From contig CDMY01000685.1 of NCBI GenBank assembly GCA_001179505.1, forward strand, positions 1 through 30,797: a stretch of 30,797 nucleotides of DNA, read 5' to 3'. The notes below the pieces were generated by a model. That model was given only the letters and a program-made list of their open reading frames with translations. It was not told the DNA's origin and made no database searches. The position numbers and the translations under genes are program-made. This stretch comes from Vitrella brassicaformis CCMP3155. Taxonomy: Eukaryota; Protista; Chromerida. Position 1 is the stretch's first letter; each line of letters opens with the position of its first letter. Shown in pieces: positions 4,801 through 25,800 of the stretch.

Positions 4801-7800
4801 ACAGCGATGGCCTCGTAAGTCACGTCGGGACGACACCGACGCATCTGGGCGGGACTGTAGATGCCCCGCTTGCCCAGCTCCATGAACCGGCCACCCTCGC
4901 CAAGCAGCCGAAGGGACGCCTCGAGCATCGCACCGGGCAGTGAGTTGAGGACAACGTCCACCTTATTGTCGTCGGCCGCCCCTTGTCCGTTGTCTTTGTC
5001 TCTGTTGCTGCTGTTGCTGTGCAGGGTGAGGAACGTGTTCATGTCGGTCTCGAAGGCTGCAGGGTCCCTCGAGGTGGTGATGTACTTGACGCCCAGCGAC
5101 CGCACGAATGNNNNNNNNNNNNNNNNNNNNNNNNNNNNNNNNNNNNNNNNNNNNNNNNNNNNNNNNNNNNNNNNNNNNNNNNNNNNNNNNNNNNNNNNNN
5201 NNNNNNNNNNNNNNNNNNNNNNNNNNNNNNNNNNNNNNNNNNNNNNNNNNNNNNNNNNNNNNNNNNNNNNNNNNNNNNNNNNNNNNNNNNNNNNNNNNNN
5301 NNNNNNNNNNNNNNNNNNNNNNNNNNNNNNNNNNNNNNNNNNNNNNNNNNNNNNNNNNNNNNNNNNNNNNNNNNNNNNNNNNNNNNNNNNNNNNNNNNNN
5401 NNNNNNNNNNCACTTTGCTGAGGTGCTGTCGAAGGTTGGCGGCCATTCCCTGCTCCACCCACGGGCCCCACTGGATCGACTGGCCACTCAGCCCGCTCGC
5501 ACGGCGATGCACCGCAAGGGCGTCGAGGCAAGCGTTGGCCGCCGCGTAGTTGGTCTGGCCAAAGTTGCCGTACAGTGATGCGGCCGACGAGAACAAGACG
5601 AAGTGGTCGACGTGGTGGTTGTGGCCCGAGGTGGTCGTGGCGTCATGGAGGTTCCACGCGCCTCCCACTTTCGGTCGGTAGACTTGCTCGATGCCCGTCA
5701 CAGTCTGCTGCTCCAGTGAGGCGTCGGCCAGGACACCGGCCGCGTGGAACACGGCCTTGACAGGAGGCAGCCCCTCAGTTGTGGTGATGCGGGCCAGGAG
5801 CCCCTCGCAGGAGCTGAGGCTGCTTACGTCACACGCCATGAGGCTGATGATCCCTGGCTGCTTCGGCCCACTGCTGTTGCTGGCACTGGCGTCATTGGAC
5901 GCGACCAAGGGCGCAAGCTCCCGCCAGACGGCGCTGTCCTCCACTTGAGGGGACGGGCGCCCCCTTCGCGACACCAAGACGACGTGCTTGGCGCCCTCAA
6001 CGACGAGCCATCGCGCCACGACCAGCCCGAGGCCGCCAAGGCCTCCAGTCACCACATAGGTGCCGCCTCCTCCTGTGGCCGTCGCAGATTGATCCGTTTG
6101 GTGGCGGCCAGAGAGGTGCAAGTTGTTGTCGGCGATGCTGGGGAGGCGGATGACGACCTTGCCCATGTGGTGGGCGCGCTGCATGAAGCGGAATGCCGCG
6201 AGTGCGTCATGCTTGCCGCCGGCACTCGTCATGTCGAAGGGGTGGATGGGTGGAGGGGTCACATGGCCCGTTTCCACGAGCCTCGTGATCCTCTTGAGCA
6301 TCGTCTGGAACCAGCCGGGGTCGCTCTCCACCATGTGGTCGACAGCGATGGCCTCGTAAGTCACGTCGGGACGACACCGACGCATCTGGGCGGGACTGTA
6401 GATGCCCCGCTTGCCCAGCTCCATGAACCGGCCACCCTCGCCAAGCAGCCGAAGGGACGCCTCGAACATCGCACCGGGCAGTGAGTTGAGGACAACGTCC
6501 ACCTTATTGTCGTCGGCCGCCCCTTGTCCGTTGTCTTTGTCTCTGTTGCTGCTGTTGCTGTGCAGGGTGAGGAACGTGTTCATGTCGGTCTCGAAGGCTG
6601 CAGGGTCCCTCGAGGTGGTGATGTACTTGACGCCCAGCGACCGCACGAATGCCTTCTTAGCGTCGCTTCCCACCGTCCCAAACACCGTCGCGCCCAGCGT
6701 GTGGCACAGCTGGATGGCGGCCATTCCGACGCCTCCCGAGGCGGCATGGACCAACACTCGGTCGCCGGCCTTGACCCTTGCCAGGTCGACGAGAGCGACT
6801 TGGACGGTGGCCATGATGACGGGCAAGGCCGCCGCCTGCTCGTGCAGCAACGAGGGCTGAGTCACCGGCAGCCGATGCACCAGCCGAGCGTCTGTCGCCA
6901 CGTAGCTCTGCAGACAGCCGGGAGCCAAGCCGAAGACGTCATCGCCGACCCTCACGTTGTCGACACCAGCAGTCGCCACGCTCACGACAGTGCCGCAGCA
7001 GTCGCCACCAGGAGCACCTGGTCCATTGAGTGATTGATTGATTGAGTGATTGATTGACAGACAAACAAACAAACGAACAGACAGACAGACAGACAGACAG
7101 AGGTACATCCATGTACTAAGCACTAAGCAGGCACAGTGCACTGTGAACTGTCTGCTTGTCTGTCTGTCTGTCTGTCTCATTGGCTTCTCGCTTTGACTGA
7201 CTGACTGACTGCTTTGACTGATTCACTCATTGATTCACTAATTGATTCACTCATTGACTGATTGGTTTACCTGGGTCTCCCGGGTAGAGTCCCATGACGT
7301 TGAGCACATCCCTGAAGTTGAGACCCACCGCCCGGACTCGCAGCAGGCAGGTGCCCGCGGGCAGCTCTCCTCCTTTGTCGGCATCTTGGCCGACACTGGC
7401 CCGGCTCAGGGGCGGATATGGACACGGCCGCAGCTTGAGGTTGGAGATGGCGCCTCGCTCAGACAGGTGCAGCTCCACAGCCCCGCGTGGCGCTATGGCG
7501 CTCTTGGCCAGTCGGGCAGCGTACAAGTGCTCCCCTCTCACAGCCACCTCCACCTCTCGGTTGGCGCCGCGACACACAGACAGGAGACGCTCCAGCTGTG
7601 ATGAGACCACCTCGACTCGACTGGCGCTGGGGGAGAGTGGCTCGATGTCGACACAGCCGACAGCCACTGGACGGCCGAAGGTCTGCTCCAACTCCAGCCG
7701 AGCGCACCGGGCGAGGCCCCACAGACCACCGCCCTCAGCCAGCCACCTGGGAAGAACCGCCGACGGTGTCCGAGACGACAGAGAACAATGTGATGGTGAC

Positions 7801-10800
7801 ACTGAGACGCTCTGCACGCCGCAGGACACCAACCACACGAAAGGCACCTTTGCCGGCGCCTGCCTGGGGGCCTCAGACTGAGGCTCCTCTTGTTGCTCGT
7901 TTGAGGCCGAGCGTGTGGGTCGCAAAGCCAAGAGAGCCTTGCAGATCTGAAGAGCAGCGTGCGTGTGCTCCACCGCCGCCTGGACCGCCCCGCCCTCTTG
8001 CTGTCTGTCCTCTTTTGCCGTGCTGTCATCAAACAGCGACCCAAGGTAGATGATCGTGTCCCAAGAGCCCTCGACCAGGCGCTGCTCGAGCCGCTTGGGA
8101 GCGGCCATGACGCTGGCAGCCGTCCAGTGATCCACTTGCATCGTCATGCCAGAGCCAGCGGTGTTCTTGTCTGCCCATTGTGTGGCCAGTGCCTCCCCCA
8201 CACCTCCCTCGCTGCCGATCACCAGCACCGAGGAGGGAGGCTCGGCAGAAGGGGAATCGCTGCTGGCTTCCGTGTCCGCCTCGGTGGTGGTCTCGTCGTC
8301 TTGTTGGCTGACTTGCTCCTCGTCGGACGGTCGTCGGATCGATGGTGCCTCCGGAGTGAGGTGCGTCCACTGGACCTCCCAGAGGACGTCCCGAGGGACC
8401 TGCACGGCCGGAGCAGCCAGGTCGATCTGCCGCGCGGTGACGCTGTCCAGGCTGGCCACCAGTTTGTGATGCTGGTCGAAGAGCTGCACGTCGAAACTGG
8501 CCTGCCCGGCAGTCGCCGACACCAGCTTGACGTGACTCCAGAAGACAGGAGCGGAGGGTCCACCCACAGCCACCTTGAGGCGGCCCAGGACAGCCCTGTC
8601 GATCGAGAAGGGCACCATCGCTTTGGCCTTGCTCTTGGCCGCCTCGCCGGCCATGGCGAAGAGAGCTGCTGCCGACTGGAGGGCCCCATCGAGGATGGCC
8701 GGGTGGATGCGGAAACCCTCCTCAAAGTCGTCCAGGCCGCTGCCATTCGTGCCTCCAGGCACCAGCTCAGCCAGCACCTCTGTGGCAGGCATCTGACCGC
8801 CCTCCTCGCCCTCGCTCTCGCCCCTCTCGGCGGTCGGAGGCCTCAAGACGTGAACGCGGCGGACCGTCTGGAACCGGGGACCGTACTCGAGACCGACCTC
8901 ACGAAGCTTCGCGTACAGCTCAGCCCCCTCGACCGTCTGGACAGCGGCGGAATCGTCAAAGGTGGCCTTCCTCTCAAGCAGCTCTGCCAGGGTTGCGCCT
9001 TGACAGTCGGAGGGAATCGATTGGTCCACACTCGTCACACCTGGCGCTTCTGACTGCTCTGGCACCTCACTCACACGCAGGACAGTCTTCGCGTGTACTT
9101 GTGACAGCCTGTCACCGCCATCCGCCCCTTGATGTTTTCCCATGTAAGACGATATCTCCAGCTCTATGCCGTCCTGTTGAGAGCCGGCCCTTCCACTCAC
9201 TTCCAGCGTTGGCAGCTCGCTCAGCGCTGCAAGAATCAAGGGCTGCTGGAACTCCACTCCTTCCAGGTACATGACATTCGACGATGGGAGGGCAGCGCTT
9301 GCCGACGCTGTGAAGATCTCGACGAAGCCAGTTGCAGGCATGACGGAGCGCTTGGATACGGCATGATCTTGAATCAGTTGGCAGACTTCGCGCCGTAGAC
9401 GTCCCACCGCCCGCCATGCATTCTTGTCCACGGGGTGCACGCGTTGCGTGAAGGGGTTGGCTGGAGGCTTCCACGGGAAGGGAGAGTGGGCCCACGTTGG
9501 CAGTGGGACAGCAGGCAGCTGGCCGCCGGCTCCCGTCTTCACTTCCATGATGACGTGAGCATTTGCGCCTCCAAAGCCAAATGAGCTGACACCGCCTATC
9601 AACATGCTGGCTTGCTCTGACGGTGTCAGTGCCGTCGCTTCGGTAGGGTAGATGACGTGGAAGTGTTCATCCACATCGATGTGGGGGTTCAGGGCCGTCA
9701 AGTGCAGGTTGGGCGGCGACACCCCGTGGTGAAGCGTCAGCAGGAGCTTGATGAACCCCGAGATGCCAGATGAACCTTCCAGATGACCGACGTTGGTCTT
9801 GAGTGCGCCCATGACCAGTGGTCTGTCGCTGGCCCTTCCCCTGCCCAGCACGGCTCTGATGGCGCCCACCTCGATGGGATCGCCCAGACTCGTACCTGTC
9901 CCGTGAGTCTCAATGTACGACACTGCGGAGGGACTGGCGCCGGCTTGCGCCAGCGCTCGAGACAAGACCTCTTGTTGAGCGGGTCCATTGGGAGCAGTAA
10001 GGCTTGCGCTTCTCCCATCGTGGTTGACGGCACTCCCGAGCACCGTTCCGAAAGACACGAGGGACTCACTTGCCGCAAAGGCCGACGGGTGACAGACCAG
10101 CACGGCGCCACACCCCTCACCGCGTGCAAATCCGTCAGCCCTCTCGTCAAAGGTCTTGCATCGTGAGTCCCGCGACAGCATGCGAGCCCTCGAGAAGGCA
10201 ATGAATGGCTGGGGAGACAGCATCAGGTTGACACCCCCCACCAGCGCGGCAGGGCATGTCTGGGTGCTGATGCTCCTGAGGGCCACATCCATAGCCACGA
10301 GCGACGAGGAGCAGGCCGTGTCAATAGTGAGACTGGGGCCCTTGAGGCCAAAGATGTACGAGAGGCGATTCGAGACGATGCTGGCGGCAGCGCCAGTGCC
10401 GGCGTAGGCACTGCGGCCACGGTCGAGTGACTGGACCAGAGCGCCCCAGTCGTTGTTGCAGCAGCCCATGAAGATGCCGATTTGTTGGCCCACCAGCGCC
10501 GCCTTGCTCAGGCCAGCGCTGTGCATGGCCTCATAGCCGACCTCGAGCATCAGCCGCTGCTGGGGGTCCATGGTGAGGATCTCGGCGGGGCCGATCTTGA
10601 AGAATGTGTTGTCGAACATGTGGGCGGCGTCCATGAAGGCTCCCTCACGAGAGTAGCAGCAGCCAGTCGCGTCGGGGTCGCTGTCCAGGACGGCCTCCAT
10701 GTTCCAGCGGGACACGGGCACTTCAGCGATGCAATCTCTCTGGGACATCAGCATGTCCCAGAAGCCTGTTGGGCTGTTGACCCCCCCAGGAAGACGGCAG

Positions 10801-13800
10801 GCCACACCCACCACCACAGCCTTCTCACGTCCACAGCTGTCCATTCCCGCCTCGGAGCTTGGCTGTGAGGATGTGCCGAACATTATCGTCTCGCCGTCAT
10901 GTCCGGTGGCACCCGTCGAGGCAGTCGAGGGCTCCCTAACTTGCTCCACGATGTAGTTGATGATGGCACGCAAAGTGGGATAGTCGAACAGGGTGGTCGC
11001 GGGCAGCTTGACGCCAATGCGCGCTGATAGGTCGTTGCGGAATTCGATAGCGCCCAGTGAGTCGATGCCGAGCTCTTGGAGCGGCGAGTCGAGAGGGGGT
11101 GCACTGATGTCGACCACTCCCTCACCCAAGGCATCAGCCGCTGCCTCAACTACCACCGACTGGATGTACGCTCGCAGCTGTGAGGAATTCAAGTCCATGA
11201 GATCCACCTTTGCAGCAACCTCCGTCCCGTCTGCCGCACGCGGCTTCCTTTCCGCCTGAGTGGTCCGCACCCTCAGCACATGTCGGGCTTTGTTTGGCGT
11301 GGGCGACGCGATCAGAGACACTTGCAGGGCTTCCATCAGGAGCCGCGGTTCCAGTTGAAGCAATGACGCATCCCACCGAGCAAGATACGACCGGTGGGAG
11401 GGCTTGGAATTGAGGATGCGGCTGAGGGCCTCAACAAGAGGCAAAGAGGGGACAGTGTGAGAGTCTGCTGTCTTGCCCAACGCCTCGAGAGTGACGACGG
11501 TTGATGCAGGCATATGCACCTGCATGGTCTCAACCAGACATCGAGCCCGGACCAGCTGCTGCTTGTCGTCTTGTGCGGGCTGTGCATTCACAACGCACAG
11601 ACACCAGGCGATGGGTGGACCCTCCCTGCTGGCCAAAGCCTCGGGCCACGACATATCTCCACATCGGATGCTGCCATCCAGTCCGTCATATCGCAGCCTC
11701 ATGGTGGTCACACGGACGCTGTCGGAGAGGTCCATCGCCCATGCGGCGAGATTCGCAGGGGGCGACTCCCATGAAGCGACGATGACGTCCTCGCATCCCT
11801 GCTCAACAGTGAGAAGTTGAGCTGCTGGGAGGGCAATGGCAGCCACATCACCGCAGATGAGGACGCATCGGGTCCTGGAGGCCGCGGCTGGGGTGAGCGG
11901 CAGGGGTCTCGGCACAGCGACGCGATCGTCGGCAGCGTTGCGCACGACCATGACGCTCTGATGCCCGAAGATGCCGTCGGTGGGAGTTGAGTACTCCAGG
12001 AGGAATCCCGTGTCATCGAAGGCCCTTTGCCAGCCCGACTGGGGCAGCAGGGGGCCGTCACGACGCATGTCGGAGTCAGTAAAGCGCCACCAGCCCTCGA
12101 GCAGGCCGAAGGTGGTCTGCAGCATGAAGCTGTGCCGCGTCAGCTCCGATATGATGAGTAGTCCGTCAGGCTTGAGTGAGGCCTTCAGATTGCGGAGCGT
12201 TGCACGGAGGTCCTGCGTTGCATGCAGCACGTTGACGGCAATGGCCAGATCAAACATCCCTGTCCCAAGGCCGCTGTGACGCGGATCGTTCTCGACGTTG
12301 AAGAGGCAGTACTCGACGTTGGAGTACTCGGCGAATCGTTTGGCGGCATTGCGCAGGAAGTAGTCGCCCAGATCAGTGAAGAAGTAGGTGGTGCGGCTGG
12401 CATCGAGCTTGGGCAGGACGCGGGACGTTGTGGCCCCAGTGCCGGCACCCACTTCGCATATGTGCATTCGCTGTGCGCCCACTGCCAGCCGATGCCGGCA
12501 TATTGCGTCGGCGACCTCCATGACCACACCGTTGCTGAACCGCGACGGGATGGTGTCCTGGTAGATGGCGGTGGCCAAGTCCATGGACCCTTCAGGGAAG
12601 ATCAGCTCCACTGCATCGACGTCACCCTTCAGGGCTTCCATCAGCCGAGGGGCGCAAGCCTGCGCCAGGGACGCCTCGTGCGACACCTCCTGTGGGGCGT
12701 TGGCGAGCGAGTCTCGGCCCTGAGTGGGGGAAGCGTCCCCATCTGAGTGCAGGGTGTCGACGAGGCTGCGGTACAGCCTGAGGTGGTGTGGATGGACCAC
12801 GTCAGCTTCCCGGACTGTCTTGATGGCCGACTGGCAGTACGTCCGACACGCTTGCTCGACTCCCACAAACCCATCCGCCCACTGTCGCGCTTCATCCGAC
12901 TCGAGCGCACGTTGAATTGACGCAGACAGATGCTCACTCAGGGACAGGGGAGCCGAGCCATCCGCACCAGTATCGTCGCGCACACCGCGACCAATCCGAA
13001 GGACGACAACCTCACTGTCACTGGCCGATCCCTTGTTCTTCTCCACTTCATTCGACAGTCGACAACTGTCCTCCACGTCCACCTCGCGCACCACCGCCCT
13101 GCTAGCGTCCGCCGTGTCACTCCGAAGCAGCTTGCGGAGCCCATGTGTGTCTGCGGCCCAAGCCTGCTGCGCGAAGCTGCGTCTTGATGCTTCGAGATGG
13201 CCCACAGCTGTCCAGCTGCTCTCCGGCGGCGTCCCAGTGGTGTCGATGCGCTTCAGAAGGCGTGCCTCCGTCACTGCCTTGTTGGTCCTAATCTCTCGTT
13301 GTGCGGCATTCTCAAGCCAGCCAACCACCTTGTCGCCCACTTTGAGGTGTGATACGGCATCTCCGACCTCCGCAACGATGCCGCCACATGCCAGGAAAGT
13401 GCTTTCTTGTGCACGGGACGGGAGGGCCAGTGCGTGGATACACAGCGCCACTTGTGTCGGCGGTGACGCTGGGGAAGTGGGTGTGCCGCTGTCAGGCTGC
13501 GGATCAGCTGCCCACCTGACCCGCACTCCCTTGTTGGCGGAGGCCTGTGTGTCCTGGGACAGGAGGACAGCCGGCGACACGTCGATGGACAGCGGGACGT
13601 CTGTGAGTGTCCGATACTCACGCGGCGCCAACAGAGTGCCGTCCCGATAGGCCCACGCAGCCTCAGAACCAGCGGAGCCATCTTGTGTCTTGGACGCTAT
13701 CGTGCCGATGACCGTGCGGATGACTGAGCCCAACACTGCGAGGGACGGAGGCGCTCCGATGAAATCAAGAGTGCGGATGGTGCACTTGGCGCCGTCATCA

Positions 13801-16800
13801 CCACTCTCGAGGCTCCGGAAGGTGAGCAGCGAGTCATAAGACGGCACATGACCGTCAGGTCTGTCGACCAGCACCAGAGTCCACACAGGTATGTCGAGAC
13901 CCAAAGACATCAGCGCCCGCACAAAGGCGCCAAGCTCTTCTTTTTGGTGCGCTGCATCCTCCGACTGAGTGCGACACCGATACAACAGCACGACCTCTCC
14001 TGGTCTGCCAGGGAGACGCTTCGCTGCGTTGGCAACTGCCTCCACGCTAGAACACACTTCCATGTGCTTGGTGCCTTGATCTGGCCAGAGGGCATCATAG
14101 AGCTCTGCAGCCCCATCCGTGAGCAGAAGCGCCACACTGTTTAAGGCCGAGCTGACGGGATGCTCCAAGGGGACCCAGCTCTCCTCAGACAGGAGCGTGC
14201 GAGCAGAGGAAGTTCCCCCCGCTGTGGCTGCTTTCTTCGACTTGGCTTCCTTGGCCATGTCCAGTCGGGAGAAGAATGGCGTGTGGGGGACGAGGCGGAA
14301 GTACATCTCCCAGCGGATGGGCTGGCAGCATATGACGTCAGTGGTCGACACGTGAGTCTGAACGGCCCACAGGCTCCGCAGCCCGAGGTCGTTGGTGACA
14401 GCAGCGAATCCCATCTTGTCGAGTTGGCTCTGGTTGACGATCTGTGCCGCCTTGCCCTGCTCGGTCCAGACGCCCCACTGGATGCTGTTGCCTGCAAGGC
14501 CCTGGGATCGCCGATATGTCACCAGAGCGTCGAGGCACGCGTTGGCAGCCCCATGGTTGGACTGGCCCAAGTTGCCCAGAAGACCAGCAATCGACGAGAA
14601 CACCAGGAAGGTGTCGGCCTGCACCCGCATCTCACCGAGGAGGTCGTGCAGCGCCCAGGCACTCGTCACTTTGGGTCCGTAGACATCCGCTATAGTCTCG
14701 AGCGTCTGGTTGCCGACGGCAGCGTCACTCAATGTCCCAGCAGCATGAATGACCGATTTGGCCACCAACCCCTCCCTCTGGAGTTGCGCGAGGAGGGCGC
14801 GGCAGTCTTTGACGGAGCTCACGTCGCACTTGGCTGGACGCAGTGTGATTGACGAACCATCCGTCGCTTCGGTACTCTGCATGATGGCCGTGAGGCGCTG
14901 CCACTCCTTGCTCTCCTTCATCTCCTCAGTCGGCTGGCCTCGTCGCGACACGAGGATGATGTTCCTGGCGCCGTGCTCAATCAGCCATTCAGCGACCACG
15001 AGACCCAGGCCGCCAAGGCCGCCAGTGATGACGTATGCGTAGCGGGAAGCCCCCGCCGGCCTCGCCGCCTGTCCCTGGATGGCCTCGAGCAGCGGAGCCG
15101 AGGGGATGGTGAGGACAATCTTGCCGATGTGGACCGCTCGCTGCATGAAGGTGAAGGCTGCTGAGCCCCCTTGCTGCTCGTCGCTGAGGTCGAAGGCGTG
15201 AATGAGGGGCGGGGTGAGCTGGTCCGTCGCGATCATGCGATTGATGCGGTTGAGCATGCGGCGGAACCAGACAGGGTCGTCACGGATCATCATGTCAAGG
15301 GCAACAGCTTCGTTGTTGACGTCTGCACGCTCTTGAGCCATCTTGCCCCGGCTCCAGATGCCTCGCTTGCCGATCTCGAGGAACCATCCACCAGGGCGGA
15401 TCAGCGCCAGAGAGAAGGTAATGAACTGACCGCTGAGGCAGTTCAAGACGGCGTCCAGCCGCCCTTCGTCTCCCAGGAACGATCTCATGTCCGTCTGGAA
15501 GCGCTGCGGGTCTCGTGAGCTTGTAATATACTGGACCCCTAGGTGGCGCAGGAGGGTCCTCTTGCGATCGCTGCCTGCCGTGGCGTAGACGATGGCTCCT
15601 GCTCGGATGCAGTGCTGCACAGCCGTCAATCCCACTCCGCCAGTCGCAGCGTGGATCAGCACACGGTCGCCGGCCTTCACGCCTGCCATGTCGCGAAGGC
15701 AGACCTCTACAGTGCCGACGATGATGGGCAGCCCGGCTGCCGCAGCGAAGGACATGTTGGGGGGCTTGAGGACGATTGGCCCAGCGGCTCTGGTCGTGAC
15801 GTATGTCTTGAGGCACCCGCTGACGACGCCATACACCTCGTCGCCCACTTTGAACTGTGCGTCGTCCACACGCGTCACAGTACCACTGCATTCCCCTCCA
15901 GCGTCAGCCGACACTCGTTCAGATGGATAAGCCCCCAGCACAATGAGAAGGTCGCGGAAGTTGAGGCCCGCGGCCCTCACGCGAATCTCCATCTCTCCAG
16001 GGGCCAGCTCTCGTCGCTCCTCAGGTGTCTGAGCACGGAGCTTCATGGTGCTCTTGAGCGACCCTCGGCCCGACAGCTCCAACTCAACAGGCCCTCTCGC
16101 AACCAGGGAGCTCTTGATCAGTCGATGCGCGTAGACCACGTCGGCTCGCAAGGCCAGTTCCGTCTCCCCGTCGGCTGTGAGCCGCGAAGGGCTGGCCGCA
16201 AGGGCCAAGAGCTGGCCTTCCCAGGTCAAGGTGCCCGCTGTGTCAAGATCCACAGTAACGAGGTGGGCAGCGTCCTGTCGCTCGAGCCTTGCGCTTCGCA
16301 GCATGCCCCAGATGCCCGCATGGACGGGTCGACGCTCGACATTGGCATCACGGGAGCGCACCCTGTGGATGCTCGACGTGAAGAACAGGGCTGTCCTGTT
16401 GCCGCTCTTCGAGCTCGAGTCGCCGATGAGTGCTGCTGCCACTTGCATGGCCCCGAACAAAGTGTGCTGCGCATGGACCTCGCAGCTCAGTCCAAGCAGA
16501 CACATGACCGTCTCCCCCCGTCCCTCCGCCAGCAACGTGGCGACATCCTCCTTGACACTGGCCGTGGAGGAGGCATCGCACCACACGACACCTGCAGCCG
16601 GCGCCTTCAGGCCTTTCGCGATGGCAGCGACGAGGGCCTCTTGGGATCGCTCGGCCACAATGATCGGCCCCACATCTTGCTCAGTTGTTGCCGCTTCGTG
16701 AGACTCCAACGTGAGGTGGGGGATCCACTTGGTCTCCCACAAGTCGCCATCTGGCTGCAGGGTCGACACACTCTTGTTGCCGCCCAGCGACAGCTCCCTC

Positions 16801-19800
16801 AGACGAAGCTTCTCGATAGACGCCACCTCCGTACCTGTCACAGACAAGACAAGACAAGGAGAGAGAAGGGATCACGTCACGTGACAAAGAGAGACTGAAA
16901 TGGTAGACACACACAAGGACTTGTGTGTGTCGTACCAGTCGATCCATCGCTTGACTCGTATATGGTAATGTCGACAGTGGCGGTGGATGGCGTGCTGTCG
17001 GTGATCCTCACGTGCGACCACAGCTCCTTGTCTTGTACCACAGCCCCAGGCCGGAGCCGCACACGTCCAATGATGAAGGGCACCATGGCCTTGTTGGCAC
17101 CGCCTGTCCGCTCAACAAGACAGGCTGCAGCCTGCAGGGCCCCATCCAGCACCCTCGGCGACGAGTGCAGGAAGCGCTCATAGGACGTCACTGAGTGGTC
17201 TCCCTTGATAAGCCCAAGAGCTTCTGACTTGCCTTTGTAGATCTCACGGAGCGTCTGGTAGGTCGGGCCGTAACACAGGCCGGCGTCCTCCAGTTGCCGG
17301 TAGAGCTCATCAATCTTGCCAACACCATCGCAGCGAGAGCGGATCTCAGCGATGTTGGCGGAGCCGCTCGAGAGCATCGGGGCTGCTGAGACGCGTCCAG
17401 TCACGTGAACCAGCTGCTCGTCAGACTCCCTTCGGCTGCCAATCTTGAACGCACCATCCTTGAGCAGCGTGCACCTTAAGGTGTGCGGCGAAGAAGCGCT
17501 GGTAAGGATGAGCGGCGCCTCGAAGCCCACATCCTCTATGGTGACGACATAGGATCGCACGCCTCCTCTCGGCCCCTTTGCCCCCCTCAGCTGGCGGTCA
17601 AGGGCTGCACTCATGGCGATCTCCATGTACCCCGCCGCCGGCCATATCAGTTGCTTGGCCACGACGTGGTCTGCCACCAGCTGCCTCACAGAGCCATCGA
17701 TCCGCGACTCGTATAAGACCACCGAGTCGTCGACCTGTCCAGCATCCTTCTTGGGCCTCCCGGCGATGAGGGGGTGCCGCAGCTCGGGCCACACGAACGA
17801 CTGGCGGTTAGTGAAGAGGTCGCGGTTGACCTGCACAGCCACATGGGTTTTCCGGGCCGCAGCCACCTCCTTGACCAAGTCTGCGAAGCTCGTGGAGCCC
17901 TCCTCTGCAGAGCTGGACCCTATCCACTGCTTGGACGCTGCGACGCGGCCTGTCAGACACTGCTTGGCCATGGTCAGCAAGACGGCCTTGGGCCCGATCT
18001 CGATGAATATGCTGCCGCCCGAGTGGTCAGCGCTGGCTTGCACAGCGCTGGCAAACCGCACGGGCTTGAGGATGTGGGAGGCCCAGTAGCTGGCGTCCTG
18101 GAGGATGTTCGTGGCCATCTCCCCGGTCACGGTCGAGTAGAAGTGGCAGTGGGGTGGGGCCAAGGACGTCTCCTCGACGAGGCGCGTGAAGGACTCCTTG
18201 ATGCCCATCATGAGATTGGAATGGAAGGCATGCGACACTGTCAGGTACTTGCAAGATCGGGTCGCTCCGAGGATCTCCAGGACCTGCTTGACAGCCTCGT
18301 CACGTCCCGAAAGCACCAAGCTCCGTGGACCATTGACGGCGGCGATGCTCACCAGCTGAGCAGCGGACTGCGGCAGCTGGCCCAGCGCCGCCTCGGCTTC
18401 TTCCTCACTCTTACGGATGGCAACCATGACGCCACCGTCCCGCGGCAGGTCACTCATGAGCCGAGATCGCTCCGACACGAGACGCAGGCCGCCCTCGAGC
18501 GTCAGAACTCCCGCAGTGACTGCAGCGACGTATTCGCCGAGGCTGTGGCCGACGACGGCGTCGGGTGTGATGCCGTGTGCCTTCCACAGCTCTGCCATGG
18601 CATACTCGAAGGTGAAGAGAGCGGGCTGGGCGTAGCGGGTGTCGTTGACGTCAGCACTGCCGTCGAAGATGATGTCCTTGATCGAGTAGCCCGCGTGGGC
18701 CATGAGGTACACATCACACCGGTCGAAGGCCTCACGGAAGGCATCCTCAGCCTCGTATAGCGTCTTGCCCATGCCGGCGCTCTGCGACCCCTGGCCAGTG
18801 AACAGGAAGACCACCCCCGGCAGCGCCTTCCGAGGGGCGTCCTCCTCGCAACTGCCGTGCTTCTCCACCAGTGTCGCCATGGCATCAGGGTCGCCCTCCG
18901 AGCAGCACACCGATGAGTTGGTACCTCCAAAGCCGAAGGAGCTCACTGTGAGCGTGAGCGGCCCCTCAGATGACAGGGCCATTGGCTGAGTGGGGAAGAC
19001 CACTGGGAAGTCACCTGGGACGATGTTGTGGTTGAGGCTCGCGAGGTGCAGGTTGCCTGGCGCTTGGCGGTTCATGAGCACCAGCACAATCTTGATGAAT
19101 CCTGAGATGCCCGCTGCGCCCTCGAGGTGACCGATGTTGGTCTTGAGAGCGCCTAGCACCAGCGGTGACGACGCACTCCTGTCCCTTGCGTAGACGGCCA
19201 TGATCGAGTTGAACTCTATGGGATCGCCGAGGGAGGTGCCCGTGCCGTGACACTCCAGCATCGACACATCCGACGGCACCTTGTTAGCGTAGGCCAGGGC
19301 CGTCTCAAGGCACCTCTGTTGCGACGGGCCATGGGGTGCCGTCAGGCTCAAGCTTCTCCCATCCTGGTTGACGGCAGTGCCTTGCAGGGTGGCGAAGACG
19401 CTCAAGTCTCCTAGCGTCACTTTCTCAAACGTCTCGAGCACCACCACACCGCACCCCTCGCCCCTGACGTACCCGTCGGCGCTGTCGTCGAATGTGCGAC
19501 ACCGGCCCTCCGGGGACAGCATGCGGGCCTTGGAGAAGACCATGAAGGGCAGCGGGGCCGTCATGACCTGTACACCTCCAACGAGTGCGCCGCTACATCG
19601 TCCCTCACGCAGAGAGTGGAAGGCCACGTCCATGGCCACCAGCGACGACGAGCACGCTGTGTCGACGCTGATACTGGGGCCCTTCAATCCAAGGACGAAC
19701 GACAGACGGTTGGCGACGATGGACGCGGCGATGGCCGTGCCCGTGTAGGGCGTCGGGATGGTTTCTTCACGGCTTGACAGGATGGCCCAGTCGTTGGAGC

Positions 19801-22800
19801 AGTTGCCCACAAACACACCCATGTCGGCGCCCCGCACGTCTTTCAGACTGAGCCCGGCACAGTCGAGGGCGCTGGTAGAGACCTCCAGGAGTATGCGCTG
19901 CTGGGGGTCCATCGTCACGGCCTCGCTGGGAGGGATGCCGAAGAACGAGTTGTCGAAGAGGTCGATGTCGTCCAGAAAGCCTCCCTGTTTGACGTAGTAG
20001 GACCGGCCAAACTTCTCGACATTGGGGTCGTAGAGGCCCTCAACGTCCCAGCGCATCTGAGGCATCTCGGTGATGCAGTCCGTCTGCGTCATCATCATGT
20101 CCCAGAAAGCCAGGGGGCCGTCCACGCCGCCAGGCAGACGACACGACATTCCAACCACAGCAAGGCCTCGAGACTTTCCCGAGACTGCTGCTGAAGTGGG
20201 CGTTGTCGAGGACTCTCTCGCCTTGGGCTGTTTATCGTCCTCGAGGGTAGTGGCCACGTATGTGACGATGCCTTCGAGAGTGGGGTGGTCGAAGAGTGCC
20301 GTGGCGGGGAGGCTGACGCCCAGCCTGCTGCTCAAACTGTTGCGGAACTCGACGGCGCCCAAGGAGTCGATGCCGAGGTCCGCCAAGGGCATGTCCATTG
20401 GCGGCTTCTCGTCAATGCCCAACACGTCACGGGCAGTATCCATGGTGATCCGTTCCAGCATCTGGCGGCGCTTGGTACCACTCAGGCTGCGCAGCCAGTT
20501 CTGTGCGTCAAGGCCTTGTTGGGCTGCTTTGGCATCAAGCTGCAGCGGCTTGACGCGAGAGAAGAGGTTGTTGTAGTGCTGGCCCGAAAAGGCCCTGAGA
20601 AGGAGACTCGTGTCGAGTGGCTGGGCTGTCGTGACACCGCCGGCAGGGTGGGCGAGGAGGGAGTCGAGCAGACGGAGGGCCAGCTCGTTGGAGATGGGCG
20701 GGATGCCCGCGGCCTTCATCTTGTCCATGCTGCCCGCCGCTGTCGCCATGCCTTGGTCCGACCACGGACCCCACTGGATGCTCATTGAAGGACGCTGAAG
20801 GAACGGACCAACACGACACACACACCAGACAGACAGAGACAGACAGAGGGGACACGTTCAGTACAGATGGGTGACGAACACGCACATGAGTGGTCTGCTC
20901 ACCTCTGACGATTGTCGATAGCTGACGAGTGCGTCCAGACAGGCGTTAGCGGCACTGTAATTGCTCTGGCCCACGTTGCCCAACAGGCTCGTGATGGACG
21001 AGAAAGCCACGAAGCGCTGGAAAGGCGACTTCAGCTGTTGTTCCGCTCGGTGGATGTTCCACGCTCCCACAGCCTTGCCGACGTATGTGGTGCGGATGGT
21101 GTCGGGTGTCTGCTGGGCGAGTGGGGCGTCGCTGAGTGCGCCTGCGGCGTGGAAGACGTGTGAGATGCGAAGGCCCTCCTGCTCGAGACCGCTCATGACC
21201 TCCAGCACACTCGTCTCAGCTCCGACGTCGCAGCTGATGGCCCTCACAGCTGCCCTGGAGTGCTGAAGCCGCGCCCATCGATCGGCCATCGACGCATCTG
21301 GCGCGCCTCGCCGTGAGAGAAGAGCGATATGGCGGGCGCCTTGCTCCACCAGCCAGTCGGCGAGCACCAGGCCCAGCCCGCCTGTGCCGCCCGTGACGAC
21401 ATGCACCCCAGATGCATCTGTGGCCGTGTCGACGGAGCTGGTGACGTTGACGATGACCTTGCCGATGTGCTGAGCTTGCTGCATGAAGCGGAAGGCCGCT
21501 GTGAGGCCGGTGCTCTTGTCACTGCTGTAGATGTCGAAGTTGCAGAGAGGGATTGGCTGGATGGACTGCCCCTCTGCCAGGGTGCTGATGTCGTCGAGAA
21601 GCTGACCGAACCACTGCGGGCGGGCCTCGATCATGTGGTCAAGGGCCACTGTCGTGTAGTGCACGTCTGGCCGCACACTCTTCATCTGCTCCTCCGTCCA
21701 GATGCCGCGCTTGCCCAGCTCCACGAACCGGCCGCCGTGGCCCAAGGACTCCAGTGAGGCCGGGATGTAGTCGTCAATCAGAGAGTTGAGCACCACAGTG
21801 GCGAGGCCCCCACTGGCAGTGAGGCTCTGCATCTCCTGCCTGAACTGTGAGGCGTCTCGTGAGGTTGCGATGAATACGATGCCCATCTGCCGAAGGAAGT
21901 CTTGCTTCTTGGCCGATCCCGCCGTGGCAATCACGTCCGCTCCCACTCGTCTGCAGTACTGGATAGCGGCGAGCCCCACTCCACCGGTGGCCGCATGGAC
22001 CAACACACGGTCACCCTTCACCACCTTGGCCGCGTAGCGCAACGAGAACTCCACGGTGGCAAACACGCTGGGCAGGGAGGCCGCAGCGCTGAATGACCAG
22101 CCGGACGGCATGCGGGCCAGCGTCCACTCGCTCGTCGTGGCGTAGGTCTTGAGGCACCCAGGGGAGATGCCGTAGACGCTGTCACCCACCTTGAACCGCC
22201 CGTCTGTCTGGTCGGCAGTGCCGATCCGGACGACTGTCCCCGCACAGTCGCCACCGGGCGGCCCAGGGTCGCCGGGATACAGCCCCATGACATTGAGGAC
22301 GTCCCGGAAGTTGAGGCCGATGGCGCGAATCCGAACCTCCACTTGCTGAGCCGACAGGTCGATGGCACGGGCCTCTTGAGGCATCGGGTGGAGGGACAGG
22401 TTGGAGATGGCCCCTCGCTCAGACATGACCACCTGGATGGGCCCCCTCTGCTGGATCCCCTGTGCTGGATGGACCCTCGGGACAAGGGTGCTGCCCTGCC
22501 GCACACACATCTCCATCTCGTTGGACTGCTGCACAAGCCAGTCCGGCAGGGCCTCCTTGGTCAGCTCATCGACGTCGACACATGCGATACGATCCGCCAT
22601 GCCCGTCTCCACCTCACACTCGAGGCGAGCGGACCGCGCAAGGCCCCACAGCCCACCATGCACTGGCAAGCCGTCGAATGCAGTCGCGGCGCCCATCTGC
22701 TTGCGGGTCAGCAGCACCGTCCGGGGCATCTGGCGCTGAGCACGATGGACACTTAGGGCGGTCTGCACGAGCCTGACAGCTCCACAGATAACTGCAATGG

Positions 22801-25800
22801 GGTCAGCGGCGTAGGCGTCGTTGACGGCTGCCGCGTAGACGATTTGAGATGCCGTATGCGCCGACACAAGTGACTCAGACACCTCGTCAGCGGCCGCAAA
22901 TCTGAGGCCCTCTCCCTCCCCCAGTGCTTCATTGAAGATGCGTTGCTGTTCATCTGATGCACCGATGACCAGGACGTTGCCGGCAGTGCCCTTGTTGGTC
23001 TCCTCGGCCAAAGGGACCCACTCGACCTCCCACAGGGAGGGCAGTGCTGCCGTGGTCTTGTTCGGCCGCCGTGAGAAGTCGACTTCCCGCAGCTTGAGGC
23101 CGCTCATGTGCAGAGCAAGATGGCCGTTTGCCGTCCTCAGAGTGACGTCGACCTCCGCTCCAGTCGCCTCTCGCGCCTTGAGCATCAGATGAGCCCACAG
23201 CTCTGTCACCCCAACGCAGGACCGCGGCCGTCTGCCGTACGTCATCCTCCTCACGCTCACTGGCACCATGGCCTTGGCGGATGGTGGCGCTTCGTCTGTG
23301 TCCTGCTGCTGCAGCAGCATGGCCGCCCCGTGCATGGCGCCATCCACCAGGGCGGGATGGTAGCCGAAGCCCTTCTCGAAGTCCTGAAGCTTGTCCACGC
23401 TGACGCGCACAAGGGCCTCCCCCTCCCCCATTTGGGCACTCCGCAGCGCCTGGAAGCGGGGGCCGTACTCGAGGCCGATCTTGTTGAGAGATGTGTAGAG
23501 ATGCGACACTGCAGATGGTACGGGGAGCCGTTCTTGCAGTGCCGTCAGCCAGTCTTCCTTATCGATGGCTGGGCTGCCCGCCGTCGGTGATTTCCCCTCC
23601 CAGAGGATCGCACGCGCCCTCACGTGCGGCTGCGGCTGGATGTCGCCCTGGTCCCCGCCACCCTGACTCCACAGAGTCGTCACTCCTTCCTTGTCAATGG
23701 TGCACCCAAACATAGGCCTCTCCCCATCTGCTGCTGGGTCGATTGTCATGGGCACCTCGAAGCTCACGTCCTCGCACACGACCTCCTGGCCCTCCACCGG
23801 CACATTCTTCTTCTGCCACTGGAACATCGCACTGCCCAAAGCGTCGAGGTAGGCAGCCGCTGGGACGACGGCCATCCCCTGCACCACGTGGTCACCGAAG
23901 AGGGACAGGGCGCTGCGGGAGAGGGTCCGCGTCGACTCCAGTTCGATCCCCTCCGATGTGTCCTTGCCGCCGACCAGGGGATGCGGCACCTCCACCCAGG
24001 GAAATGACCGCCGGGTGAATGTCACCGGAGAGGCGGGCCCAGCGTCGCAGCTGTCCGGCCGCTCCAGGATGACATGCGCATTGGTGCCGCCGAAGCCGAA
24101 AGATGAGACGCCTCCGTATACGGCCCCGTTGCTGTCTGCCAGCTTGGCAGGCTCCGAGGGGAAGACCATGGGGACGTCGTTGACTGCGATGTGGGGGTTG
24201 AGGGCCGAGAAGTGGAGATTGGGCGGGGCGGTCTTGTTACGCAACACTAGAATGACCTTGAGCAGGCCAGCGATGCCCGCCGCTCCCTCCAAGTGGCCGA
24301 TGTTGGTCTTCAGTGCGCCCATGACCAGTGGTCTGTCGCTGGCCCTTCCCCTGCCCAGCACGGCTCTGATGGCGCCCACCTCGATGGGATCGCCCAGACT
24401 CGTACCTGTCCCGTGAGTCTCAATGTAGCCGAGCGCATCATACGATATGCCTGAATGAACGAAGCAAACAACACAACAGCACCCAGCCAGCAGAAGGGAA
24501 ACATACATACAGGTGTGAGCAGCACCATGACTCATTCCTTTGTCTCGCTTGTGAATGACGGACGGACCTGCATCCTCGATGGCCTCGGCGAGAACCTGCT
24601 CCTGCGCAGGGCCGCTGGGAGCAGTCAGGCTGGCAGCTCGGCCACCATGGTTGACTGCTGAGCCACGAATGCGCGCCAACGCGTGTTTCTCCGTCACTCC
24701 CTCACTATCACTGTCGGCTGCCGCCTTGAGTACGATGGTAGCGCAGCCTTCACCTCTGACGTATCCATCAGCCGAGGCGTCGAATGTCTTGCACCGTGCG
24801 TTCCTCGCCATCATGCCGGCACGGCAGAAGGCGGCCGTCACCTTGGGCGACATCATCAGATTGACTCCAGAGGCAACTGCAGCTGAGCAGATGCCCTTCT
24901 GCAGGTACTTGACGGCCACGTCGACAGCCACAAGGGACGACGAGCATGCCGTGTCCAGTGTGAGGCTGGGCCCCTGGATGCCCAGCCAGTAGGACGACCG
25001 GTTGGCGATGATCGATGGCGCACTGGACGTGGCCGAGTAGCTGCTGACGGGCAGAGCTGTGGAGTCCACGACGTACGACCACTCGTTGCAGCAGCTGCCC
25101 ACAAAGACACCGATGCGCTGCCGCACCAGAGCTGCACGCTCGAAGCCCGCCTGGTGCAGAGCGGTGAAGGTGACCTCCAGCAGGAGGCGCTGCTGGGGGT
25201 CCATGGTCCTCGCCTCGCTCTCGGCGATCTTGAAGAAGGAAGAGTCGAACAGCTCGGCGTCCCGAATGAATCCGCCCTCCTTGATGTGCATCTTGGTCTC
25301 GCCCCTGCCCTCGGGATTGGGGTCGTACCACTCGTCCGCATCCCATCGCGTCGGCGGCACCTCCACTATCGCATCATGACCTCCTACCACCATGCGCCAC
25401 AAGTCGTCAAGGCTCTCCACGTCGCCCGGCAACCGACACGCGGCGCCCACCACGAGCACCGATGACGCATCAGCCGCGTCGGTCACCCTGGACAGTGCCC
25501 TCGATGAGAGGAAGGCAGTCGATTCAGTCAGCATTTCCACCAGATAGTCACATATGGCGCTGAGGGTGGGGTAATTGAAGATCAAAGATGGTTCCAAGCT
25601 GGGGGGAGGGAGGGTGGGACAGACACAATCAACACACAAAGACAGACACGCATCGATGAATGGATGGATGGGTGCACTCTGAGGCTACTGTGTCACTCAC
25701 TCACTGTTGTCTCACTCAGGTACCTGATGTTCAGACGGCTTGCCACCAGATCAGTGAATTCCACGGCGCCGATCGAGTCCACGCCCAGCTCCAGCAAGGA

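What the first reader, a model, noticed from the sequence alone, without database searches (positions are those of the whole stretch)
14540..14580. KR2 catalytic Tyr replaced by His in the module that carries the methyltransferase
Seen: KR2 reads GQSNHGAAN (CAT at 14553-14555) whereas KR1 reads GQSNYSAAN and KR3 GQTNYAAAN. Its NADPH motif, Lys and LSD motif are kept, and DH2/ER2 motifs look intact. Established: the Tyr is the catalytic acid of SDR-type KRs, and C-MTs act on beta-ketoacyl substrates. Inference: either KR2 is redox-dead so module 2 leaves an alpha-methyl-beta-keto unit, or it is slowed so that methylation precedes reduction (kinetic gating), or His acts as an alternative acid.
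Basis: partly seen in the sequence, partly recalled or inferred. Interest (0 to 1): 0.7.

Follow-up and report, generated by a model that had tools for sequence, protein, structure and literature searches.

The report
His-type ketoreductase beside a C-methyltransferase
In a giant polyketide synthase gene of the alga Vitrella, one ketoreductase domain has histidine where the textbook catalytic tyrosine should be; this is a conserved variant that recurs, in bacteria and protists alike, in modules that also carry a C-methyltransferase, and it probably still works.

Summary
On the minus strand, codon CAT (window 14553-14555) puts His765 at the catalytic-Tyr column of KR2 (GQSNHGAAN). KR1 and KR3 have Tyr.

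It is not an error or a private mutation. Four paralogous modules elsewhere in the genome (Vitrella brassicaformis CCMP3155) have the same His, and wherever the contig reaches far enough (three of the four) the same methyltransferase (MT). About 25 other KRs whose motif I read all have Tyr.

The pattern extends well beyond Vitrella. In 225 PKS proteins from public data, 83 of 116 KRs in MT-bearing modules have His. Only 7 of 433 KRs in modules without an MT do. The change arose many times.

A second change always goes with it: the lid Met of the "G-M-A" motif is lost in 94 of 94 His-KRs. In KR2 it is Lys799.

His-KRs keep their NADPH motif, Lys, Ser and Asn, and they sit with intact DH and ER domains. 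KR2 evolves under the same constraint as its Tyr sisters.

The KR of the yersiniabactin synthase HMWP1 also has His, and its product is reduced. A 2026 paper notes this as a puzzle.

Most likely KR2 is an active reductase that accompanies C-methylation. The "redox-dead" reading is disfavoured.

The parts
14553..14555 (-). His765 codon (CAT) at the catalytic-Tyr column of KR2
   Evidence: Aligned to the catalytic Tyr of 5bp4 and 3slk.
14460..15038 (-). KR2 catalytic domain (Pfam KR PF08659, residues 604-796 of ORF 7251-16847)
   Evidence: E 3e-52.
15003..15026 (-). NADPH-binding motif TGGLGGLG of KR2, intact
14721..14744 (-). AAGTLSDA: LSD (LDD-type, B-type) stereo motif of KR2
14667..14681 (-). 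YGPKV with catalytic Lys726
14583..14603 (-). VFSSIAG with the catalytic Ser
14541..14543 (-). Asn769 (the N of the Y/H-x-x-x-N motif), kept
14469..14471 (-). Val793 in WGVW. KR1 and KR3 have Pro here (WGPW). Most His-KRs have Ala or Val.
14451..14453 (-). Lys799 at the lid 'G-M-A' position. KR1 and KR3 have Met. No His-KR (0 of 94) has Met or Leu here.
12003..12488 (-). C-methyltransferase domain of the same module, downstream of KR2. SAM motif EVGAGTG at 12435-12455, catalytic His in NVLHAT at 12216-12233, Glu in LEGWW at 12087-12101.
15111..16001 (-). ER2 (ADH_N / ADH_zinc_N), NADPH motif intact, dN/dS 0.12-0.18 in the deep comparisons (0.12-0.25 excluding the near-identical C858/C127/C496 pairs)
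16952..17734 (-). DH2, catalytic motifs conserved in the C236 paralogue
17912..18811 (-). AT2, the only AT among the three modules in the window
19043..20164 (-). KS2
10950..11156 (-). ACP that closes module 2
20945..20971 (-). KR1 comparator motif GQSNYSAAN (Tyr). Its lid WGPWSDQGMA lies in the next open frame at 20738-20773; the two pieces were not joined.
5534..5560 (-). KR3 comparator motif GQTNYAAAN (Tyr). Its lid WGPWVEQGMA is at 5441-5470.

Best explanation
KR2 belongs to a recurrent 'His-type' form of the PKS ketoreductase domain that accompanies SAM-dependent C-methyltransferase domains. Shown here: (a) His765 sits at the catalytic-Tyr column. (b) The lid Met is replaced (Lys799) and the WGPW Pro is Val. 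(c) The NADPH site, Lys, Ser and Asn are intact. (d) Paralogous modules share the state, and it has been held under purifying selection. (e) The same pair of changes has arisen repeatedly in KRs of C-MT modules from unrelated bacteria, dinoflagellates and this chromerid. Inferred: KR2 is still an NADPH-dependent beta-ketoreductase in which the imidazole(ium) of His765 takes over the proton-donor role of Tyr. Module 2 (KS-AT-DH-ER-KR-...-MT-ACP) would then make a C-methylated, fully reduced unit. More speculative: the remodelled active site makes reduction wait for, or prefer, the alpha-methylated beta-ketoacyl-ACP, because the C-MT needs the beta-keto group and loses its substrate if the KR acts first.
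For: Paralogues: four KRs at 76-81% identity (C236, C858, C127, C496) all read N-H-A-A-A-N, whereas about 25 other KRs whose motif I read in the fetched genome loci read Tyr. The C236, C858 and C496 paralogues share the whole ER-KR-X-MT-X-ACP layout; C127 is an 1800-bp contig covering only the ER-KR part and too short to show the rest. The PKS-type MT occurs in the genome only at the four loci whose context is readable.

Constraint: KR2 dN/dS is 0.21-0.28. Over the same span and gene pair, KR1(Tyr) is 0.26 and KR3(Tyr) is 0.27. The decayed linkers are 0.33-0.41. DH2 motifs are conserved, and ER2 dN/dS is 0.12-0.18 in the comparisons with the window copy.

Generality: in 225 PKS proteins, 83 His, 32 Tyr and 1 Gln were found in MT modules, against 7 His, 419 Tyr and 7 other in modules without MT. 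In the first search, which was seeded without an MT, the counts were 7 His and 5 Tyr with MT against 2 His and about 300 Tyr without. On a tree of 541 KRs there are at least 28 His/Tyr changes. In phylogenetically independent pairs the MT goes the same way in 8.8 and the opposite way in 1.0 (median p 0.02).

Coupled lid change: the lid column is Met or Leu in 395 of 448 Tyr-KRs and in 0 of 94 His-KRs. Independent pairs go 8.2 the same way and 0 the opposite way (p about 0.008).

Live look: His-KR modules keep both DH motifs in 43 of 51, the ER NADPH motif in 30 of 30, the KR NADPH motif in 82 of 90, and Asn in 88 of 90.

Characterised precedent: the intact E. coli HMWP1 (KS-AT-MT-KR-ACP) reads GQSAH with CAT, and the gene stretch is present in 2266 E. 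coli genomes. PMC12997852 reports the same Tyr-to-His in HMWP1, MicC and AgrA and says it conflicts with the hydroxyl seen in the product.
Against: No enzyme assay of any His-type KR was found, and activity is inferred from product structures and domain context. Purifying selection could also reflect the structural role of the KR as scaffold of the reducing region. HMWP1 additionally lacks the Asn (it has Cys), so it is not a perfect model. In Vitrella the MT lies after the KR, inside a decayed second reducing loop, unlike most bacterial cases (MT before KR). The Vitrella copies represent one evolutionary event. The second database sample was seeded with a His-KR plus MT module and is therefore enriched. 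Both Tyr and His occur in MT modules of single proteins (P0125, P0190), so His is not obligatory for methylating modules. The residue at the lid position is not uniform (Glu, Ala, Ser, Lys, Arg), so no single partner for His can be named. No reads or RNA data were available. The product of this PKS is unknown.
Confidence: 0.68

Rival explanations
1. KR2 is reductase-dead (C1-like) and is kept only as the structural hub of the reducing region. Module 2 then leaves an alpha-methyl-beta-keto unit, and DH2 and ER2 are idle.
For: By the standard fingerprint, loss of the catalytic Tyr predicts an inactive KR (as quoted in PMC12997852, and PMC7327777). Purifying selection is compatible with a scaffold role.
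Against: The NADPH motif and the Lys, Ser and Asn are all kept in KR2 and in about 90% of His-KRs, unlike typical C-type KRs. DH2 and ER2 keep their motifs and are constrained. Forty-three of 51 His-KR modules with a DH keep both DH motifs, and 30 of 30 keep the ER cofactor motif. Products of HMWP1, MicC and AgrA are reduced. KR2's dN/dS is not relaxed relative to the Tyr KRs.
Confidence: 0.17
2. The His is a sequencing or assembly error, or a private, recent mutation of this copy.
For: CAT is one change from TAT. The assembly has gaps and duplicated stretches nearby. Reads could not be consulted.
Against: Four further copies on other scaffolds, at synonymous distances from 0.08 (among the C858, C127 and C496 copies) to about 0.5 (between these, the window copy and C236), read His. 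The codon was read as CAT in the three copies where the codon alignment covered it and was not recorded for C496. The NCBI protein model of the C127 copy also has His (P0226). The coupled lid change (Lys799 for Met) is a second, independent difference.
Confidence: 0.01
3. The His-type KR has a non-redox job, for example epimerising or enolising the beta-ketoacyl-ACP, or presenting it to the C-MT. Reduction is done by another enzyme.
For: Redox-inactive KRs that epimerise are known (C2 type; PMC7327777). The AEM 2026 authors suggest 'an alternative mechanism' for the ketoreduction.
Against: C2-type KRs need the Tyr and Ser and usually have a broken NADPH site, which is the opposite pattern. The C-MT has its own His-Glu dyad.
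Confidence: 0.08

Closest known systems
KR domain of yersiniabactin synthase HMWP1 (Irp1), and by report MicC (micacocidin) and AgrA (agrochelin)
   Same: His at the catalytic-Tyr column (CAT). A C-MT in the same module. NADPH motif, Lys and Ser kept. An LxD (B-type) motif. Lid Met lost (Arg in HMWP1). WGAW instead of WGPW. The products are reduced at that carbon (PMC12997852).
   Different: HMWP1 is bacterial, with MT before KR, no DH or ER, and gem-dimethylation. Its Asn is also replaced (Cys). Vitrella KR2 keeps the Asn, sits in a DH-ER-KR module with the MT downstream, and groups with alveolate Tyr-KRs, so its origin is independent.
Canonical B-type PKS ketoreductases (for example the KRs of MAS-like PKS 5bp4, SpnB 3slk, AmphB 3mjs)
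   Same: The same fold family (Pfam PF08659; E 4e-31 to 5bp4), the same cofactor motif, the Lys-Ser-Asn residues and the LxD motif.
   Different: Tyr is replaced by His, the lid Met by Lys, and the WGPW Pro by Val.
C-type (reductase-incompetent) KRs of modular PKSs
   Same: A canonical catalytic residue is missing, so the usual fingerprints and predictors would file KR2 here.
   Different: C-type KRs usually have a damaged NADPH site and sit in modules whose product keeps the ketone. KR2 has an intact site and live-looking DH and ER partners.
Competition between C-MT and KR in fungal highly reducing PKSs (LovB, tenellin synthase)
   Same: The same logical problem: the C-MT must act on the beta-ketoacyl-ACP before the KR removes the ketone. 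Papers on the topic were listed but not read (PMC6839510, PMC7870829). The kinetic-competition model for LovB is from my own knowledge.
   Different: In those iterative enzymes the KR matched here (LovB, 7cpx) was not checked for His. Control there is ascribed to relative rates and substrate selectivity, not to a changed catalytic residue.
CurJ C-methyltransferase (5thy) and DisA C-MT (6cca)
   Same: The MT of module 2 is their closest solved relative (E 3e-50 and 8e-36), with the catalytic His and Glu kept.
   Different: In CurJ-type modules the MT lies between DH and KR.

Membership tests
PKS ketoreductase domain (SDR fold, Pfam PF08659) | Significant match to the KR profile and to solved KRs | tested here: met
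   E 3e-52; 41 PDB sequences, best 4e-31.
PKS ketoreductase domain (SDR fold, Pfam PF08659) | Glycine-rich NADPH motif | tested here: met
   TGGLGGLG at 15003-15026.
PKS ketoreductase domain (SDR fold, Pfam PF08659) | Catalytic Lys, Ser and Asn | tested here: met
   Lys726, the Ser of VFSS and Asn769, aligned to 5bp4 and 3slk.
PKS ketoreductase domain (SDR fold, Pfam PF08659) | Catalytic Tyr | tested here: not met
   His765.
C-type (reductase-incompetent) KR | Loss of a catalytic residue | tested here: met
   Tyr is absent.
C-type (reductase-incompetent) KR | Degenerate NADPH-binding site | tested here: not met
   The motif is intact in KR2 and in 82 of 90 His-KRs.
C-type (reductase-incompetent) KR | Module leaves the beta-ketone, with no functional DH or ER behind it | tested here: not met
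   DH2 and ER2 motifs are intact and constrained. The product itself is unknown.
His-type KR of C-methylating modules (HMWP1-like; an informal class) | His at the Tyr column | tested here: met
His-type KR of C-methylating modules (HMWP1-like; an informal class) | C-MT domain in the same module | tested here: met
His-type KR of C-methylating modules (HMWP1-like; an informal class) | Lid Met (G-M-A) replaced | tested here: met
   Lys799. Met or Leu in 0 of 94 His-KRs.
His-type KR of C-methylating modules (HMWP1-like; an informal class) | NADPH-dependent reduction actually occurs | not testable with these tools
   Only indirect evidence: product structures of yersiniabactin-type compounds and retained DH and ER.
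PKS C-methyltransferase (CurJ type) | SAM motif plus the catalytic His-Glu dyad | tested here: met
   EVGAGTG, NVLHAT and LEGWW aligned to 5thy.

The most novel reading that the evidence does not exclude
Tyr-to-His together with loss of the lid Met defines a distinct, convergently evolved KR type that accompanies embedded C-methyltransferases in all kinds of modular PKS, bacterial and eukaryotic. This type is catalytically active with His as the acid. Its purpose would be to enforce the order 'methylate, then reduce'. Current predictors that call such KRs inactive would then mis-predict the products of most C-MT modules.
Probability: 0.4. Interest if true: 0.75.

Novelty: new variant of a known kind. 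Interest (0 to 1): 0.6.

Why it matters
KR fingerprints are used routinely to predict polyketide structures from sequence, and they treat the Tyr as indispensable. If the His form is active, and is the usual partner of C-methyltransferases, two things follow. Product predictions for many cyanobacterial, myxobacterial, Chloroflexi and algal clusters need correcting. The old question of how a module makes methylation precede reduction also gains a concrete, mutable handle: His/Tyr plus the lid residue. For Vitrella it means module 2 most likely adds a saturated methyl-branched unit rather than a keto unit. The same substitution in HMWP1 was called puzzling in 2026. The association found here offers a context for it, though not yet a mechanism.

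Tried and rejected
Neither the base nor expression could be checked in reads.

2. Literature: several full-text searches for a stated link between His-KRs and C-MTs found nothing general. Only the passing remark in PMC12997852 turned up. The Skiba 2016 CurJ paper is not held. The library is partial, so the absence is weak evidence.

3. Named characterised enzymes: the second protein search returned almost only unnamed or generically named proteins. A JGI fragment labelled McyG has His, but the label is automatic, so I count it only as a hint.

4. Codon variation at the His: every copy whose codon I read uses CAT, so synonymous variation gives no extra evidence.

5. Structure prediction was not run, because the tool returns no coordinates and so could not show whether Lys799 touches His765.

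6. The large representative-protein search was not used, because the claim does not rest on absence of relatives. As a result the Chromera velia MT-bearing PKS (PMC7464705) was not examined.

7. Exons were not joined. KR1's lid lies in the next open frame and was read separately.

Full report
**What is there**

The window is scaffold C685 of a 72,700,666-base, 1064-scaffold assembly. These are exactly the figures published for Vitrella brassicaformis CCMP3155 (PMC4501334). A paralogous protein on an 1800-base scaffold is named for that strain at NCBI (P0226).

The minus strand carries a modular type I PKS, read here as three long open frames separated by short intron-like gaps:
- 25639-20858: KS-DH-ER-KR1
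- 20821-16877: ACP-KS-AT-DH
- 16847-7251: ER-KR2-X-MT-X-ACP-KS-DH-ER, followed by KR3

**The observation**

The + strand has ATG at 14553-14555, which is CAT on the coding strand. The translation reads GQSNHGAAN at residues 761-769. KR1 reads GQSNYSAAN and KR3 reads GQTNYAAAN.

HMMER alignment to solved KRs (5bp4, 3slk) puts the His on their catalytic Tyr. It puts Lys726, the Ser of VFSS and Asn769 on their Lys, Ser and Asn. The NADPH motif (TGGLGGLG) and the LSD motif are present.

**Not an error and not private**

A six-frame search of the genome with KR2 found 73 KR matches. Four of them, on scaffolds C236, C858, C127 and C496, are 76-81% identical to KR2, and all read N-H-A-A-A-N. About 25 other KRs whose motif I read in the fetched loci all have Tyr.

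The C236, C858 and C496 copies are colinear with the window over ER-KR-X-MT-X-ACP-KS at about 70-79% identity. C127 is an 1800-base scaffold that covers only the ER-KR part. The PKS-type MT occurs in the genome only at the four loci whose context is readable, plus one weak 27% hit elsewhere.

The copies differ by dS of about 0.4-0.57 in the deeper comparisons, and by about 0.08-0.12 among the C858, C127 and C496 copies. Every copy whose codon I read uses CAT.

**Constraint**

Pairwise Nei-Gojobori dN/dS values:

| Region | dN/dS |
|---|---|
| KR2 | 0.21-0.27 (deeper pairs) |
| ER2 | 0.12-0.18 (pairs with the window copy) |
| MT | 0.18 |
| KS3 (the KS after the module-2 ACP) | 0.16 |
| KS2 | 0.18 |
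| AT2 | 0.19 |
| DH2 | 0.31 |
| The two linkers around the MT | 0.33-0.41 |

Over the same roughly 185-codon span and the same gene pair (window against C236), KR1(Tyr) gives 0.26, KR2(His) gives 0.28 and KR3(Tyr) gives 0.27. There is no sign of relaxation. The DH2 catalytic motifs are conserved in the paralogue.

**The pattern outside Vitrella**

A word search with the KR2 region returned 120 large PKS proteins. Among about 340 KR domains in them, 9 have His at the Tyr column. Seven of those nine sit in a module with an MT. In the Fisher table restricted to modules with a complete left boundary the counts are 6/2/3/299, p = 2e-9.

A second search, seeded with one such bacterial MT-KR module, enlarged the set to 225 proteins. 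The combined counts are:

| Module type | His | Tyr | Other |
|---|---|---|---|
| With MT | 83 | 32 | 1 (Gln) |
| Without MT | 7 | 419 | 7 |

The second sample is enriched by its seed, so I rely more on the first sample and on the tree-based test.

The His-KRs are polyphyletic. One (P0018) nests among the Tyr-KRs of its own protein. The Vitrella clade groups with coccidian and Vitrella Tyr-KRs. Two eukaryote-type His-KRs (Durusdinium P0041, and P0119) form another group.

On a FastTree of 541 KRs, at least 28 His/Tyr changes are needed. In phylogenetically independent pairs the MT changes in the same direction in 8.8 pairs and the opposite direction in 1.0 (median p 0.02).

Named carriers span Chloroflexota, Cyanobacteria, Acidobacteriota, Planctomycetota, Beta- and Gammaproteobacteria and a dinoflagellate. 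Among short KR fragments, 19 of 35 have His.

**A coupled second change**

Comparing His- and Tyr-KRs column by column, the strongest difference after the His itself is 34 residues downstream, at the Met of the W-G-P-W-x-x-x-G-M-A lid segment.
- It is Met or Leu in 395 of 448 Tyr-KRs and in 0 of 94 His-KRs, where it is Glu, Ala, Ser, Val, Lys or Arg.
- Independent pairs go 8.2 the same way and 0 the opposite way, p about 0.008.
- KR2 has Lys799 (14451-14453), KR1 and KR3 have Met, and HMWP1 has Arg.
- The Pro of WGPW tends to become Ala or Val. KR2 has Val793. This trend is weaker, p about 0.07.
- Tyr-KRs in MT modules also often lack the Met (19 of 32, against 34 of 416 without MT).

The lid change therefore seems tied to the MT context as well. 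That this segment borders the active site follows from general knowledge of SDR and KR structures. I could not measure distances here.

**Do His-KRs work?**

Indirect evidence says they do.
- His-KRs keep the NADPH motif (82 of 90) and the Asn (88 of 90).
- Their modules keep both DH motifs (43 of 51, similar to Tyr modules) and the ER cofactor motif (30 of 30). A dead KR would make those domains useless.
- There is a characterised case. I located irp1 in E. coli CFT073, where it is frameshifted and I left it so. I also located an intact allele (WP_113415167.1). Its KS-AT-MT-KR-ACP module has a KR that reads GQSAH with CAT, with the NADPH motif, the Lys and the Ser kept.
- A 2026 paper states that the KRs of HMWP1, MicC and AgrA all carry this Tyr-to-His change and are predicted inactive, and that this conflicts with the hydroxyl observed in the product (PMC12997852).
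- A 2024 update of KR motifs, 90% actinobacterial, does not mention His (PMC11228615).

No assay of a His-type KR was found.

**Mechanism**

Shown: the anatomy, the conservation and the associations above.

Inferred: His765 serves as the proton donor to the carbonyl during hydride transfer from NADPH. Histidine does this in lactate and malate dehydrogenases and in 3-hydroxyacyl-CoA dehydrogenase (established knowledge, not tested here).

More speculative: the remodelled pocket delays reduction, or restricts it to the methylated intermediate. The reasoning is that a C-MT needs the beta-keto group, a race that does not exist when the methyl comes from methylmalonyl-CoA.

The MT of module 2 is a genuine C-MT. 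Its closest solved relatives are the CurJ and DisA C-MTs, and its His and Glu are kept. Module 2 would then add a saturated, methyl-branched C2 unit.

**Rivals**

- A dead scaffold KR remains possible (about 0.17).
- A non-redox role is possible (about 0.08).
- An error or private mutation is effectively excluded.

**Comparison and novelty**

KR2 is a KR by fold and by four of its five catalytic or cofactor features, but it fails the Tyr criterion. It does not fit the C-type pattern, because its NADPH site and partner domains are intact.

It matches the informal HMWP1-like His type in all sequence features tested. It arose independently, and its MT lies downstream in a decayed second reducing loop. 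That loop was the subject of the earlier scan note s1-201695. I confirmed only that its MT is intact and that its linkers evolve faster.

I found no statement in the searchable literature of the general association with C-MTs or of the coupled lid change. The library is partial, and specialists may know of it.

Noticed in passing
window 2685-7180 (-): Two nearly identical ER-KR3 stretches (KR motif at 3702-4658 and 5432-6199) flank runs of N. This is probably an assembly duplication around gaps rather than two real modules.
   Followed up: no
window 7000-7180 (-): A low-complexity CTGTC-rich stretch reads through as an odd peptide between the start of ER3 (end of the frame 16847-7251) and the rest of ER3. 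It looks like a short intron. A similar read-through lies inside KS1 (frame 25639-20858).
   Followed up: no
window 20858-25639 and 7251-10900 (-): Modules 1 and 3 have no AT (KS-DH-ER-KR-ACP). Only module 2 has one, as reported for algal PKSs.
   Followed up: no
G000:C791:103400-103729 (+): A weak MT-like match (27% identity, E 1e-8) lies just upstream of a Tyr-type KR (C791:103970-104542). It could be a decayed or divergent MT beside a normal KR.
   Followed up: no
G000:C858:4030-5661 and G000:C496:61976-65176: Each paralogous locus shows two MT matches about 1-2.5 kb apart. These are either tandem duplications of the MT stretch or assembly redundancy.
   Followed up: no
P0125 and P0190 (Bryobacterales MAG proteins): Single proteins carry several AT-DH-MT-KR modules, some with His and some with Tyr. 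The choice therefore seems module-specific, perhaps linked to the number of methylations or to stereochemistry.
   Followed up: no
KR alignment: Tyr-type KRs in MT modules have also often lost the lid Met (19 of 32, against 34 of 416 without MT). The lid change may therefore precede or be independent of the Tyr-to-His change.
   Followed up: partly
P0089 residues 479-734 (Vitrella protein): Another Vitrella PKS has a KR-like domain with Ala at the Tyr column and Cys at the Asn column (LNVSAGAAC). It is a clearly degenerate KR, in contrast with KR2.
   Followed up: no
L038:34035-43522 (E. coli CFT073): irp1 is annotated as frameshifted, and irp2 is interrupted by an IS200 element in this strain. 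I only read the KR motif and left the genes as they are.
   Followed up: no
G000:C236:1-17802 (-): The paralogous gene on C236 has the same order of KR types as the window (KR3-like, KR1-like, then the His-KR with MT). This suggests the PKS family grew by duplication of a three-module block.
   Followed up: partly
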